From Octopus sinensis (Eukaryota), in assembly GCF_006345805.1 (NCBI RefSeq), contig NW_021831852.1, positions 1 to 64,000 on the forward strand: a DNA stretch of 64,000 nt, read 5' to 3'. A program made the position numbers and the translations under genes. The notes beneath the pieces were generated by a model. It was not told the DNA's origin, ran no database searches, and saw only the letters and a program-made list of their open reading frames with translations. Of this stretch, positions 1,792 through 63,545 are shown piece by piece; position 1 is the first letter of the stretch; each line of letters starts with the position of its first letter.

Positions 1792-1935
1792 ATGGATTTC
1801 AAACAACTGTCCAGGAATATTTCGCAGCGTTATTCCATTTCTTCTCTCATAGCTTTTGGGGTTCTTCTCGTTCTGACGATCGTGATTCTTCATCAAGATT
1901 CAAGAATAGGAAAAATGGAAGAGAAATCGAAAACG
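1792..1935 (+). CDS. Copy A exon 1 (48 aa; basic N-terminus plus hydrophobic [16 protein letters not shown] segment)
   Basis: The only copy with an intact 144-nt exon 1; canonical GTAAGT donor shared by all five copies. Confidence 0.8.
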
Positions 1936-2780
1936 GTAAGTCATGGATTTTGTGTTAATATATGTATGTCTTTATGTATTTATATATGCATGTATGTATG
2001 TATGCATTTACGTATGTATGTATTAATATGTGGATGTATGTACGTACCGATGGATGGATGGATGTAAGGATGTATGCATGAATCACTTACATATGTTGCT
2101 ATGGAGCACACACACACACACATAAGATCACACACGTAATCACACACGAACACACAGGCGTACACACCTAAACATACATATATATATACATATACATATA
2201 TTTGTATATATAATATACATGTATATGTATATATAATATACATATTTATGAATATATTAGTGCGTGAACATATATAGATATATGTATACAAACAAATATA
2301 TGCGTGTGTGTATCTATCACTGTATCTCTCTGTCTATCTCTCTCTCTCTATTTATCTATGTATATATATGTATGTGTGTGAGTGTGTGTGTGTGTTTGTC
2401 TGTATATAAATATATTCTTTTAACCGTTTCAGTCATTTGACTGCGGCCATGCTAGAACACTGCGTTTAGTAGGACAAATCGACTTCAGGAATTATTCTTT
2501 GTAAGCCTTTTGCTCATTATATCGTTATCTCTAGCCGAACCGCTATGTAACGGGGACGTAAATACACCGACATCAGTTGAGAATCGATAGTGGTGCGACA
2601 ATAACAGACACATGCATAAAACATAGATACATACACACTATGTGTGCTATACACACACAAACACACACACATAGATCTATATATATATATATATATATAT
2701 ACATATCACATATACATACACACATATATAGTTACGTAGGTATGTACATACATATCTATCTATCAATCTATTTATCTACA

Positions 2781-2835
<55 letters not shown>

Positions 2836-2845
2836 TATCTATCTA

Positions 2846-2916
<71 letters not shown>

Positions 2917-2955
2917 TGAAATATATCTATATATATATCTATATCTATATATATA

Positions 2956-2986
<31 letters not shown>

Positions 2987-58467: not shown

Positions 58468-58746
58468 GAGAATGCAAATGCATATCTAGGATCTCATGCA
58501 TACAGCGACACTTCTTGCACTCACATAAACACTAACATATATACACCACAATTCCTTCACCCGTTGCTAAACATGACTTCTTTTAAGGTCAAACTGTAAT
58601 GAATGTTTCCGTAATTTCATATATAATTTTACTTAATATCTTCTTTTTTACTTGATTTATTCTTACCAATTCTAGGATGCCAGAAATATCATCAAAACAA
58701 GAAAAATCTAAATCTGTTCGAAATGATTCTAGAAAACATTTTGTAA
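49862..58746 (+). pseudogene. Copy D: exons 1-3 present (49862-50003, 54095-54147, 56232-56305), exon 4 deleted
   Basis: Exon-4 acceptor ttcttaccaattctAG (ends 58675) is followed directly by g-atgccagaaatatc, which in A lies ~170 nt past the stop; exons 1-3 are 142, 53 and 74 nt (all frameshifted). Confidence 0.85.
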
Positions 58747-61282
58747 GATTTCAGTTTATCAAACTTATCGTTGAAATAAAATGGATTTGTTTTTAACAGT
58801 ATTTTGTCTTCTGTCTCATGATTCAACAAACCCCAATAAAGTACCACCATAGAATTATATCAGCTTTCATGCACAGCCTTAGAAAATCTAATACTCGACG
58901 CTACTATCTCGACATCTTGGTTTTCAAATTACAAACACGGATTCTGACAAGGAGCATGACCGCTACATTACATAGCACAGAACTTAACTGATTCTTTCAA
59001 CAACACCAGATACTCCCACACAATCCATTCTATTTGCCGTTATTAATCAGGAAAAGCTTTCCGATCCATTCCTACCCCATATCTTATAAAACCTATTTAT
59101 CGTCAACTTTAGAAATATCAAAAATGTTCAAATTAAGCTTTCTGAGAAATGTGGAATTTACACGATCAATCCCTCAAAAGACAGTCGAAATAAGTATTGG
59201 TCCTGCCAACCTAAATCTATATCACAAAATGTCCCACCTCTCTTCAGATAAGATACAAAAATGAAACTCGATGCCCACAACATACACGTCATACACTAAC
59301 GCTGATTATACAAGAACAAGAAAGGAAATCAACCAGAAAAATTGCCTCATTTCGACAGCAGAGACATCAAATGCGACGATTTCTTTACTCATTACGTACA
59401 ACAACCAGAACCGAAGAAATGATGGATCCTAGAAGCTGTACATTTCATGCGAAACGAATACAACACACATAAAAGTGAGAGTAAAGAGAGCAAATATAGT
59501 CAGGGCAAGCACGGATGCTGTGTAAGAAGGCTGAGATGTTGTGACCGTCACGGTATATCCAATAGGATCATGAGAGTATGTTGGAGTGTGTCGAATATGT
59601 GTTAGATAAACGAAGGTTTCGGGTTAACAGCATCAAGCTGCAATAAAGATTAAAGATTATTAATGTTTACTATCCCAGTATATTAGTCTAATGGGTAAAT
59701 CTGCATTCGCTTCTCCAGATTACAAATATTTCTGCGTTGTAAATCGTAAACATTGCAGAGAATACGGACGCCGGTAGATCTTCAAATTCATCTTTTGATT
59801 CAGCGGCATAATTAGACAGTTTAAAACGACCGCCATATGTTTAAGCTGTACAGAGCATGCGCAGCTGCATATGCAACCCGCCATTACAATAGGAAAAATT
59901 ATGGGACTTGTTGAAATTAACCTTATTTCGAGGGCCAAACAGAGAGTGTTACACACACACACACACAGACACACACACAACAAACACACAAACACACACA
60001 CACAATACACACACCACACACAAATTACACACGCACGCACACACACACATACACACACACACACGCCACACACAACATACATACACATATATATACAAAT
60101 AGATTAAATTAGGTCAAACTATATCTGAGGGGTCTAATATGCTTCCTCTGAGAAATTTTAATCATAACAATGGAATTCCGTCGTACATATGCAGTACATA
60201 CGGGAGGTGCACTTGCGATTGAGTTTCAAATGGGAGACACTGTACCTGGATGTTTTGCTAGGATTTATAAACAAGAAGAAAAGTATTCAAAGCTAGTGAT
60301 AATTACGAGCTAAAAAATGTATGAATGTCATTATTCGGTTTTAATAGAATATTCTGGTCCACACGAAATAGAGACGGCTTCTAACTGAGTTCCGAGTATC
60401 TTCATTGGAATTTCAACAACAGGAACAGGATATTTTTGTATGTATGTCTGTATGTATGTATGTATGTATGTAGTATGCATGTATGTAGTATGTATGTATG
60501 TAGGGATGTAGTATGTATGTATGTATGTATGCAGGAATGTATGTATGTATGTATGTATGTGTTGTATGATGTATGTATGTATGTATGTATGATGTATGTA
60601 TGTATTGTATGATGTATGTATGTATGTATGTATGCATGAATGTCGGGTATGTATGTATGTATGTATGCATGTATGTAAGTAGGTATGCAGTATGTAGTAT
60701 GTATGCATGTAGGTATGTATGCATGTGATGTATTATATGCATGAATGTATGTATGTATGTATGTATGTAGTATGTATGTATGTATGAATGTATGTATGTA
60801 TGTATGTGTATGTATGTATGTATGTATGTATGTATGCATGTATGTATGTAAGTATGTATGTATGTATGCAGGGCTGTATGTATGTATATATGCATGAATG
60901 TATGTATGATGCATGTATGCATGTATGTATGTATGTATGTATGTATGCATGCATGTATGTATGTATGTATGTATGCATGTATGCGTGTATGTATGTATGT
61001 ATTATGTATGCATGCATGAATGTATGCTTGTATGTATGTATGCATGTATGTATGTATGCAGTATGCAGGTATGCATGTATGTATGCATGTATGCAGGTAG
61101 TATGCAGTATGTATGTATGTATGTATGTATGTATGTATGTATGTACGTGTGTATGTATGTAGTATGCATGTATGTATGTTTGTATTGTTAGGTATGTATG
61201 TATGTATGTATGTAGTATGCATGTATGTATGTATGTATGTATGTATGTATATATGTAGGTATGTATGCATGTATGTATGTAT

Positions 61283-61828
61283 GTCAGGTCACTTTCGAGT
61301 GCTACTGGTGACATGTAACCCAGTACAACCTGTTGCATTGTCGGGTCGTCGGCGACTAAGCCGGCACCCCACGAAGCTGCTGGTGATGAGCGAGTTTATT
61401 GGACACCCTGCGGGATGAAAAACAAAACCGTCAAAGGACGGAGGAACTCTTGAGAGTCAACGGCCATCCAATACCGTCTTAAGGCTGTATCATTCGCGGG
61501 GACATAGAAATAATCGGACTGAATATCCGATCGCGCGGTTAAACCATTGGGAGTGAAGGACTCCTAGACTTTGTTAGGGCATCCTTCTAGAAGGTAACTC
61601 AGGTAACCGGGATAACTCCGATATAAAACCTGCGGCTCAGTGGTTACCGATGATGTTGACTTGTTCTTCTTTTCGGATTATGGCTGCTGTTGCTTAGTGG
61701 CTGGGATTGACTCAGCGCACAGCCTTTCCTCGCTTTAAAAAAAATCTTCATGCACAGGCATTGCACGATAATAATATTGATTAAGCACCGAGCAATGGCC
61801 ATACTCGATAACGAGGGGGCAGCCACCA
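61283..61828 (+). mobile_element. Fifth copy of the ~555-bp element (start of unit E)
   Basis: Colinear with 93-646. Confidence 0.45.
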
Positions 61829-62939
61829 TATATGTATGTATGTATGGATGGATGGATGGATGTAAGTATATATGCATGTATGTATGGATGTATGTATATA
61901 TATATGTATGTGTATATGTGTCTATCGATATATACACGCTTACATTCAAACATACATGCATGTATACATGTATACATACATATATGTATAAATATATGCA
62001 TACATATATGTATGTATGTATGAAAGTATGTATGTATGTTTGTATGTATGTATGTGTGCATGTATGTGTGTATGTATGTATATATATGTATATATGTGTG
62101 TGTATGTAAGTATATATGTATGGGGGTATGTATGTATGTATATATGTATGTATATACCCGAGTGTGTATGTATGCATGTATGTATGTATGTGTGTATGTA
62201 TGTATGTGTGTGTTTATGTATGTATGTGTGTGTGTATGTATGTATGCATGTTTGTATGTATGTATGGGTGGGTGGGAATTGGTAGGTTTTGATTTTGATA
62301 TTCACATAAAACTTTTCTAATCCGATTAACGCTTGTTGTGAAGAATCCAATCCGAACAGCGGACTTCATTAGATTAAGTCTTGCGATTACTGTGTGGGTT
62401 GAACGAAATACTTCCCACGCTGAATATTAAAACAGTGTGTGAGTGTGTGTGTGTGTGTGAGTGTGAGTGTATGTGTGTGTGTGTGTGTGTGTGTTGTGTG
62501 TGTGTGTGTGTGTGAGTGTATGTGTGCGTGTGGGAGTGTGTGTGCGTGTGTGTGTCAGAGTATGTGTGTGTGTGGGAGTGTGTGTGTGTGTCAATGTGTG
62601 TGTGTGTGTCAATGTGTGTGTGTGTGTGTCCGTGTATGTGTGTGTGTCAGTGTGTGTGCGTGTGTGTGTCAGCGTGTGTGTGTGTGTGTGTCAGTGTGTG
62701 TGTCTGTGTCAGTGTCTGTGTGTCAATGTGTATGTGTGTGCGTGAGTGTGTGTGTGTGTGTGTGTGTGTAAGACAATGTATCTGTGTGTGTGTGTCAGTG
62801 TGTGTTGGTGTCTGTGGGTTTGTGTGTTGGTGTGTGTGTATGTCAGTGTGTGTGTGTTAGTGTGTGTGCGTGTGTGTGTCTGTGTGTCAGTGTGTGTGGG
62901 TGTGTGTGTGTTCGTGTTTGTGTCAGTGTGTGTATGTCA

Positions 62940-62970
<31 letters not shown>

Positions 62971-63403
62971 CGCGTGCGTCTGTGTATTCGTCTGTTGAAC
63001 GAAATATTTCCCACAATGAATATTAAAACAGTTTCCCAAGAATAACAAATAAAATTAAATAAAAACATTAGTAAATAAATATATCATAATATATCCAGAA
63101 ATAGGAATCATTTCACTTTACACGTGTCTCTCATTCATCAAAATATTTTGCTAATTATTGTGTGACAATATCAAACCATCTCTTTCCAATAATTAAACCT
63201 GTCAGACAATTTCACACCCGCTTTTACAGTTCCACCAATCGCATTGGTTCATAAATTTACGATAAGATCTATGCCAGAGCTGGGTTGTTGTGCGCTCAAT
63301 AAATACGTGGAATTCAGTTACAGGTCTTCAGCTTAAACCTCGCATCTCGATCTTTTGTTGAAGCCACACGAAGTATCACGTACGACCGACAACTGTCACC
63401 AGA

Positions 63404-63545
63404 ATGGACTTCGCACAACTGTCCAGGAATATTTCGCAGCGTTATTCCATTTCTTCTCTCATAGCTTTTGGGTTCTTCTCGTTCTGACGATCGTGATTCT
63501 TCATCAAGATTCAAGAATAGGAAAATGGAAAGAGAATCGAAAACG
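63404..63545 (+). CDS. Copy E exon 1 (gene continues beyond the window); homopolymer indels as assembled
   Basis: ATGGACTTCGCACAACTG...AAAACG/GTAAG homologous to 1792-1935; ttttggg vs ttttgggg shifts the frame. Confidence 0.7.

What the first reader, a model, noticed from the sequence alone, without database searches (positions are those of the whole stretch)
1792..63545. Tandem array (at least 5 copies) of a spliced NC1-like-domain gene invisible to the ORF track
Seen: four exons with consistent splice sites and phases (144+52+75+500 nt = 256 aa plus stop), repeated in A-C, truncated in D and beginning again in E. Established: the Cys pattern (RWGRTTCP...GGGSN.LCLP...PCAVC...C..GW..EY.GYLM...CVD...CG..PC.PY...ELTC.VC) is that of the spongin short-chain collagen C-terminal domain, related to collagen IV NC1 and widespread in invertebrates with mostly unknown function. 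Inference: this is a recently and repeatedly expanded cluster undergoing birth-and-death evolution, the best candidate in the window for an undescribed system such as a diversified recognition or extracellular-matrix family.
Basis: partly seen in the sequence, partly recalled or inferred. Interest (0 to 1): 0.8.

Follow-up and report, generated by a model that had tools for sequence, protein, structure and literature searches.

The report
Octopus tandem array of NC1-like genes
The window holds five tandem copies of a real four-exon octopus gene for a membrane-anchored protein whose cysteine-rich head is related to the end-domain of basement-membrane collagen; databases already label the family, its function is untested, and the broken reading frames seen here are most likely sequencing errors.

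Summary
The array is real. Five units of 13-18 kb lie on the + strand, each starting with the same 144-nt first exon. Units A-C carry all four exons with conserved AG/GT sites. D lacks exon 4 through a clean ~660-bp deletion. E starts at 63404.

The window is Octopus sinensis chromosome CM016876.1, about 3.95-4.01 Mb. Every copy in the window has at least one frameshift. All seven frameshifts I could check are 1-bp deletions that are absent from the public assembly. There, A and B are intact 771-nt CDSs (144+52+75+500, 256 aa).

The protein has an N-terminal signal anchor, a short linker and a 190-aa head with ten cysteines, and no collagen repeats. Its relatives are the widespread "short-chain collagen C4-like" (spongin-type) proteins. 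The AF2 model matches only collagen IV NC1 structures in the PDB, but with low TM-scores, and Pfam C4 does not match.

Exon 4 has dN/dS of 0.34-0.89, and variation sits in predicted loops. RefSeq already labels the family, but its models here chain exons across units, and the exact A and B proteins are not in the protein collection. The array is larger than the window. Function is untested. Interest is moderate.

The parts
1792..1935 (+). Copy A exon 1 (144 nt): start codon, cytoplasmic tail and signal-anchor segment
   Evidence: It is 100% identical to the public assembly.
8628..8678 (+). Copy A exon 2 (51 nt in the window, 52 nt in the public assembly). A 1-bp deletion (AAA to AA) lies near 8661.
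11538..11612 (+). Copy A exon 3 (75 nt): start of the NC1-like head ([16 protein letters not shown]...)
13247..13746 (+). Copy A exon 4 (500 nt, intact, includes the stop codon): the rest of the head
19086..19228 (+). Copy B exon 1 (143 nt). A 1-bp deletion near 19135 is absent from the public assembly.
23281..23332 (+). Copy B exon 2 (52 nt, intact)
26374..26448 (+). Copy B exon 3 (75 nt, intact)
28950..29448 (+). Copy B exon 4 (499 nt). A 1-bp deletion near 29115 (TTTTCTTTT to TTTTTTTT) is absent from the public assembly.
32151..32292 (+). Copy C exon 1 (142 nt). Two 1-bp deletions near 32172 and 32184 are both absent from the public assembly.
39012..39063 (+). Copy C exon 2 (52 nt, intact)
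41899..41973 (+). Copy C exon 3 (75 nt, intact)
44428..44923 (+). Copy C exon 4 (496 nt). It has one in-frame 3-bp gap relative to A and B, and one 1-bp deletion near 44832. That deletion could not be checked against the public assembly.
49862..50003 (+). Copy D exon 1 (142 nt, two 1-bp deletions relative to the other copies)
54095..54147 (+). Copy D exon 2 (53 nt, one extra base)
56232..56305 (+). Copy D exon 3 (74 nt, CCC to CC)
58660..58690 (+). Copy D deletion junction. The exon-4 acceptor (TTCTAG) is joined directly to the 3' flank. All of exon 4 and about 160 bp after it are missing, with TAG microhomology at the junction.
63404..63545 (+). Copy E exon 1 (142 nt in the window, small indels). 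The rest of the gene lies beyond the window.

Best explanation
The window is part of a large tandem cluster of protein-coding genes on Octopus sinensis chromosome CM016876.1.

Gene structure. Each unit of 13-18 kb is one four-exon gene.
- Exon 1 encodes a short cytoplasmic tail and a 19-residue hydrophobic signal anchor.
- Exon 2 encodes a charged juxtamembrane linker.
- Exons 3 and 4 encode a 190-residue, all-beta head with ten cysteines. This head is the C-terminal domain of the 'spongin short-chain collagen' family, a derived relative of the collagen IV NC1 domain.

Architecture. The octopus proteins have no collagen triple helix.

Inferred steps.
- The protein inserts as a type II membrane protein with the disulfide-bonded, N-glycosylated head outside the cell, and the head may be shed.
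- The head works as an oligomer, probably a trimer. Relatives carry the same head on collagen or coiled-coil stalks, and NC1 itself is a trimerisation module.
- Paralogs keep an almost invariant core and differ in four or five surface loops, which probably set partner or ligand specificity.

Array evolution. The array grows and decays by unequal crossing-over. Exons 1-3 stay nearly identical between units, exon 4 diverges, and D has lost exon 4.

Frameshifts. The frameshifts in the window are sequence errors, not pseudogenisation.
For: Shown:
- The window matches GCA_006345805.1 CM016876.1 at 99.1-99.6% identity.
- All 7 checkable exon frameshifts are 1-bp deletions in the window. None is present in the public assembly, and there are no substitutions inside those exons.
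- Window versus public assembly shows 76 mismatches against 134 gap events. That pattern fits sequence or assembly error better than evolutionary divergence.
- A and B are intact 771-nt CDSs with AG/GT sites in the public assembly.
- O. vulgaris has a gene with the same 144/52/75/500 structure.
- Homologs reach E=3e-111 and are named 'short-chain collagen C4-like'.
- The family has 4,881 clusters at 50% identity.
- 18 of 59 relatives carry Pfam Collagen repeats, and others carry coiled coils.
- The AF2 model has pLDDT 91.
- The top 26 Foldseek hits in the PDB are all collagen IV NC1, with E down to 5.5e-5.
- hhalign aligns the PCAVC...CxxGW..Y.GY segment to the start of the second NC1 subdomain.
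- Hydropathy peaks at 2.67 over residues 15-33. There are ten cysteines, an NYT sequon and no Gly-X-Y run.
- Exon-4 dN/dS is 0.34-0.89.
- Exons 1-3 diverge by 1-4% between units, against 6-15% in introns.
- Variability concentrates outside predicted strands, p=1.5e-4.
- A tryptic peptide identical to a stretch of the paralog P0004 (sequence) is listed in the O. vulgaris ink proteome (PMC10142993).
Against: - There is no transcript or protein evidence for the window's own copies. The exact A and B proteins are not in the 15-billion-protein collection.
- RefSeq models at this locus join exons across units.
- Pfam C4 and a PDB sequence-profile search give no hit.
- Foldseek TM-scores are only 0.22-0.29, with rmsd about 17 A.
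- Frameshifts in C exon 4, D and E could not be checked against a second assembly.
- Topology, oligomeric state and ligand are all inferred.
- Loops vary more than strands in most protein families, so the loop pattern is not evidence of diversifying selection.
Confidence: 0.85

Rival explanations
1. The units are real pseudogenes. The frameshifts in the window are genuine, and the array is decaying.
For: - Every copy in the window has at least one frameshift.
- D has lost exon 4.
- No annotated protein carries the exon 4 of A or of C.
Against: - 7 of 7 checkable frameshifts are absent from the public assembly of the same locus, with no accompanying substitutions.
- Indels are about as frequent as substitutions between copies within exon 1, and they outnumber substitutions between the two versions of the locus. 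Neither fits neutral decay.
- dN/dS is below 1.
- Exons 1-3 are far better conserved than the introns.
Confidence: 0.06
2. The array is an assembly artefact: one or two genes were falsely expanded by mis-assembly of repeats.
For: - The region is rich in microsatellites.
- The window carries many small sequence errors.
Against: - Units differ by 6-15% in introns and 10-13% in exon 4.
- Units carry private features: a LINE in C, a 2.5-kb duplication in A and a deletion in D.
- The same order of units is found in GCA_006345805.1.
- O. vulgaris has the same tandem layout.
- Further sub-arrays lie nearby.
Confidence: 0.02
3. The cluster is one complex transcription unit. Shared 5' exons of an upstream unit are spliced to alternative exon 4s of different downstream units, giving a constant 5' part and variable heads.
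For: - RefSeq models XP_036366807.1 (P0005) and LOC118767014 (P0008) share their 5' exons.
- They end in the exon 4 of units 40 kb and 117 kb downstream.
Against: - Every unit has its own start codon, signal anchor and conserved splice sites.
- Exon 1 stays conserved in all five units.
- The O. vulgaris annotation gives a clean within-unit model.
- Automated gene predictors often chain tandem paralogs, as shown by many 3-9-domain 'proteins' in the family.
Confidence: 0.06

Closest known systems
Spongin short-chain collagens and related proteins (Exposito 1991; Aouacheria 2006; Fidler 2017, PMC5395295). RefSeq labels them 'short-chain collagen C4-like'.
   Same: - The C-terminal head is clearly homologous: 44-51% identity to bivalve, brachiopod, annelid and amphioxus members, some of which carry collagen repeats.
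- The head has ten cysteines, which fits the published pattern of '7 shared with collagen IV plus 3 spongin-specific'.
- There is no HSQ motif.
- Tandem multigene organisation also looks common in the family.
   Different: - There is no Gly-X-Y collagenous domain at all.
- The N-terminus is an uncleaved-looking signal anchor, not a signal peptide followed by a stalk.
- The gene is expanded to tens of copies on one octopus chromosome.
Collagen IV NC1 domain (PDB 1LI1, 1M3D, 5NAX, 8TYS; Pfam C4 PF01413)
   Same: - It is the only fold family that Foldseek finds: the top 26 hits, probability up to 0.99.
- A local profile match covers CxVC...IP..CPxGW...GY at the start of the second subdomain.
- It is a cysteine-rich, all-beta head at the C-terminus of the chain.
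   Different: - The Pfam C4 model does not match.
- TM-scores are 0.22-0.29.
- The head is about 190 residues rather than about 229, and has 10 cysteines rather than 12.
- According to Fidler 2017, spongin-type heads lack the domain-swapping region.
- There is no long triple helix and no 7S domain.
C1q / TNF pairing (an analogy of architecture only)
   Same: One head domain occurs either on a collagen stalk or directly on a type II membrane anchor, as with gC1q heads and TNF ligands. This is inference from established knowledge.
   Different: The fold is unrelated. Trimerisation of the octopus head is not shown.

Membership tests
Spongin short-chain collagen (SSCC) family | C-terminal NC1-like head homologous to annotated SSCC or 'short-chain collagen C4-like' proteins | tested here: met
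   One search gives E=3e-111 to 1e-43 over 97-100% of the head. One search shows 21 invariant columns across 59 sequences from several phyla. One search finds 4,881 clusters.
Spongin short-chain collagen (SSCC) family | Cysteine pattern of 7 shared with collagen IV plus 3 spongin-specific, and no HSQ motif (Fidler 2017) | tested here: met
   The head has ten cysteines, at residues 81, 109, 160, 163, 180, 207, 234, 239, 250 and 253. All are invariant or nearly invariant. The sequence has no HSQ. I did not align it column by column to the published figure.
Spongin short-chain collagen (SSCC) family | Short collagenous (Gly-X-Y) domain N-terminal to the head | tested here: not met
   There is no run of three or more Gly-X-Y triplets. 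Pfam Collagen gives no hit on the full-length protein. 18 of 59 relatives do have this domain.
Spongin short-chain collagen (SSCC) family | Direct similarity to the founding Ephydatia muelleri C4 sequence | not tested
   That sequence was not on hand. The 'C4-like' name comes from NCBI and UniProt.
Collagen IV NC1 (Pfam C4, PF01413) | Match to the Pfam C4 model or to NC1 chains by sequence profile | tested here: not met
   Pfam gives no hit. PDB phmmer and hmmsearch find no NC1 chain. hhalign gives only a local match: probability 36%, E=3.7e-4, 45 columns.
Collagen IV NC1 (Pfam C4, PF01413) | NC1 fold | tested here: inconclusive
   The top 26 Foldseek hits are all NC1, with E from 5.5e-5 to 2e-2 and probability up to 0.99. 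However, TM-scores are 0.22-0.29 and rmsd is about 17 A. The model itself is confident, with pLDDT 91.
Collagen IV NC1 (Pfam C4, PF01413) | Long triple-helical domain, 12 cysteines and an HSQ motif | tested here: not met
   definition
Type II (signal-anchor) membrane protein | A single N-terminal hydrophobic segment of about 19 residues, with a cysteine-rich and glycosylatable C-terminal part | tested here: met
   Kyte-Doolittle hydropathy is 2.67 over residues 15-33, and the next best segment scores 1.18. The head has an NYT sequon and ten cysteines. The same N-terminus is seen in other cephalopod sequences.
Type II (signal-anchor) membrane protein | Actual membrane topology, and whether the anchor is cleaved | not testable with these tools
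   Flanking charges are not decisive: +3/-1 on the N side and +5/-3 on the C side.

The most novel reading that the evidence does not exclude
Octopods have turned the spongin-type NC1-like head into a large family of collagen-less, membrane-anchored proteins. Their four or five hypervariable loops would give each paralog its own assembly or ligand specificity. The result would be a trimeric cell-surface or secreted recognition repertoire, for self-recognition, immunity or ink and mucus defence. Its logic would parallel TNF versus C1q, and it might be further diversified by cross-unit splicing.
Probability: 0.1. Interest if true: 0.75.

Novelty: new variant of a known kind. Interest (0 to 1): 0.35.

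Why it matters
Spongin-type NC1-like proteins occur in most invertebrate phyla, yet almost nothing is known about what they do. The octopus cluster offers a simple, stalk-less, membrane-anchored form of the head in tens of paralogs that differ mainly in surface loops. That makes it a convenient system for asking whether the head trimerises on its own and what it binds.

There is also a practical point. The public gene models at this locus chain exons across units. The window's sequence carries frameshifting errors. Any count of this family made from annotation alone will therefore be wrong.

Tried and rejected
- A scan for a 52-nt AG...GT exon conserved between copies found only a hydrophobic artefact at 3123 and 5572. 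The true exon 2 was found only with the O. vulgaris homolog. In copy A of the window it is 51 nt, which is why the scan missed it.
- The conserved block just upstream of exon 3 is intron, not exon 2.
- Pfam and PDB sequence searches gave nothing useful.
- Fetching the public sequence for window 39417-64000 failed. P0008's gene range is too long, P0013 is not on record, and no annotated protein carries C's exon 4.
- The DOI for Aouacheria 2006 is not held, so what I say about that paper comes from papers that cite it.
- A sliding-window dN/dS found small windows with a ratio of 1.3-2.0. They rest on too few sites, so I do not claim positive selection.
- The representative search lists only the best 150 hits. 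I therefore could not see whether true collagen IV chains appear among the weak hits.
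Full report
**What is in the window**

A six-frame motif scan and a self-comparison show a tandem repeat with a period of 13-18 kb. Using the Octopus vulgaris homolog P0006 as a guide, all exons were placed.

| Exon | A | B | C | D | E |
|---|---|---|---|---|---|
| 1 | 1792-1935 | 19086-19228 | 32151-32292 | 49862-50003 | 63404-63545 |
| 2 | 8628-8678 | 23281-23332 | 39012-39063 | 54095-54147 | beyond window |
| 3 | 11538-11612 | 26374-26448 | 41899-41973 | 56232-56305 | beyond window |
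| 4 | 13247-13746 | 28950-29448 | 44428-44923 | absent | beyond window |

Acceptor and donor sites are canonical and almost identical between units. In D the exon-4 acceptor TTCTAG is followed directly by sequence that lies about 160 bp downstream of the stop codon in C. D has therefore lost the whole of exon 4 through a deletion of about 660 bp with TAG microhomology.

**The frameshifts**

No copy in the window has an open frame.
- A lacks one A in exon 2.
- B lacks one base in exon 1 and one in exon 4.
- C lacks two bases in exon 1 and one in exon 4, and also has an in-frame 3-bp gap.
- D has indels in exons 1, 2 and 3.
- E has indels in exon 1.

Within exon 1, indels are as frequent as substitutions between copies. 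That is not how neutral decay looks.

The locus encoding the RefSeq protein P0005 (XP_036366807.1) turned out to be the same place: Octopus sinensis GCA_006345805.1, chromosome CM016876.1, reversed, at 99.1-99.6% identity over window 1-39416. Between the two versions there are 76 mismatches and 134 gap events. I checked ten exons with 20-nt flanks. The two versions differ there by seven 1-bp deletions in the window and by one substitution that lies in an intron flank, not in an exon. With the public sequence, A and B are intact 771-nt CDSs of exactly 144+52+75+500 nt, giving 256 aa plus the stop codon.

C exon 4, D and E could not be checked, because the fetched public locus ends at window 39416 and no other look-up reached the rest.

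**Extent of the cluster**

- Upstream of the window, the public locus holds two more exon 4s and further partial units.
- About 28 kb beyond that, on the opposite strand, lies another sub-array with four exon 1s and three exon 4s in 58 kb.
- A single gene with the same structure lies at 6.53 Mb.
- O. vulgaris has the same gene structure, 144/52/75/500, and the same tandem layout.

RefSeq models here are chained across units. P0005 spans 40 kb and ends in B's exon 4. P0008 spans 117 kb. The exact within-unit proteins of A and B are not present among about 15 billion catalogued proteins.

**The protein**

Residues 15-33 form the only strongly hydrophobic segment, with a Kyte-Doolittle score of 2.67. 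The remaining 190-residue head has ten cysteines and a conserved NYT sequon. There is no Gly-X-Y run.

Homologs:
- The closest are 'short-chain collagen C4-like' proteins of O. sinensis, O. vulgaris, O. bimaculoides and Argonauta, at 70-87% identity.
- Next come annelid, brachiopod, bivalve, coral and amphioxus proteins, at 44-52%.
- A profile search finds 4,881 clusters at 50% identity. Many predicted 'proteins' contain 3-9 heads, which suggests that tandem arrays are common in this family.
- Of 59 aligned relatives, 18 carry collagen repeats. Others carry coiled coils in front of the head. Other cephalopod sequences share the signal anchor.

Literature: Fidler et al. 2017 define spongins as a short collagenous domain plus an NC1 domain, with seven cysteines shared with collagen IV, three of their own and no HSQ motif (PMC5395295). 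The octopus head fits the cysteine count and lacks HSQ. It fails the collagenous-domain criterion.

**Relation to collagen IV NC1**

- Pfam C4 and PDB sequence searches are negative.
- The AF2 model is confident: pLDDT 91, pTM 0.87, all-beta.
- Its top 26 PDB matches by Foldseek are all collagen IV NC1 domains, with E from 5.5e-5 to 2e-2 and probability up to 0.99. TM-scores are only 0.22-0.29.
hhalign against it gives a local match that places PCAVC...LPAR..C.PGW..EYSGYL on RCAVCEAP...IPPCPSGWSSLWIGYS. That is the start of the second NC1 subdomain. Probability is 36% and E is 3.7e-4.
- The published homology is therefore supported, but it is remote.

**Evolution**

- Between units, exons 1-3 differ by 1-4%, the alignable parts of introns by 6-15% and exon 4 by 10-13%.
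- Exon 4 has dS of 0.18-0.34 and dN/dS of 0.34-0.89 among seven copies. The heads are under purifying selection overall, and the units are not very young.
- Across 32 octopod paralogs, variability concentrates at head residues 16-20, 31-34, 54-62, 70-78, 113-116 and 128-133, mostly outside predicted strands. Mean entropy is 0.89 bits outside strands and 0.43 bits within them, p=1.5e-4.
- Small windows with dN/dS of 1.3-2.0 rest on too few sites to claim positive selection.

**Expression**

There is no evidence for the window's own copies. One peptide, [24 protein letters not shown], is identical to a stretch of paralog P0004 (sequence). It is listed in the O. vulgaris ink proteome (PMC10142993). 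Short assembled contigs of about 1 kb encode complete homologs. The octopus genes span more than 10 kb, so these contigs are probably spliced transcripts. I found no paper describing this octopus cluster.

**Verdict**

This is a real tandem array of functional-looking genes for collagen-less, probably type II membrane-anchored proteins with a spongin-type NC1-like head. Sequence databases already label the family, but it is mis-modelled at this locus and has no tested function. Trimerisation, topology and loop-based specificity are all inferences.

Noticed in passing
window 36006-38195 (+): A 5'-truncated non-LTR retrotransposon sits in intron 1 of copy C. Its 391-aa ORF at 36630-37805 matches Pfam RVT_1 at E=1.5e-34. 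This insertion explains the local rise in GC content and part of C's extra length.
   Followed up: partly
window 2891-5433 and 5347-7904: A 2.5-kb direct duplication at 97.4% identity lies inside intron 1 of copy A only. Within it, a segment of about 450 bp (3714-4198 and 6186-6670) is inverted relative to its counterparts in B, C and D.
   Followed up: no
window 15508-18214, 46859-48050, 60437-62266; also 1067-1373, 18383-18668, 31104-31723, 48850-49445, 62435-62985: Long (TGTA)n and (GT)n arrays fill the 5-kb spacers between units. They create long spurious ORFs on both strands, for example 478 aa at 16881-18317 on the minus strand.
   Followed up: no
window 1-39416 versus L002 23238-60234: The window differs from GCA_006345805.1 by 134 gap events against 76 mismatches. 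The seven 1-bp deletions in about 1.85 kb of exon sequence are somewhat more than the average rate predicts: about 3 expected, by my rough estimate. I do not know where this version of the sequence comes from.
   Followed up: partly
L002 10001-50234; window about 10017-10079, 24974-25033, 25712-25762, 40416-40478, 41234-41284: RefSeq model XP_036366807.1 uses two alternative 5' exons, [10 protein letters not shown]... and SLLDLLCCPETVNIVLPSKT. Degenerate copies of them lie in intron 2 of A, B and C, and one copy carries a stop codon. They could be an alternative promoter or signal-peptide exon in some units, or annotation noise.
   Followed up: partly
L003 (CM016876.1 4063156-4121627, + strand): A second sub-array of the same gene lies in the opposite orientation, about 50 kb upstream of the window's first base. 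The cluster is therefore two diverging arrays.
   Followed up: partly
proteins P0139-P0171: Many database 'proteins' of this family contain 3-9 copies of the head. One example is P0139, with 3,949 aa and 9 copies. These are either true multi-head proteins or tandem genes fused by gene predictors in other invertebrates.
   Followed up: no
L001 versus window: Different parts of the O. vulgaris locus match best to different window units. Its upstream gene's introns match A, P0006's intron 2 matches C and its 3' flank matches B, all at about 92% identity. That mosaic is what unequal crossing-over or gene conversion between units would produce.
   Followed up: no
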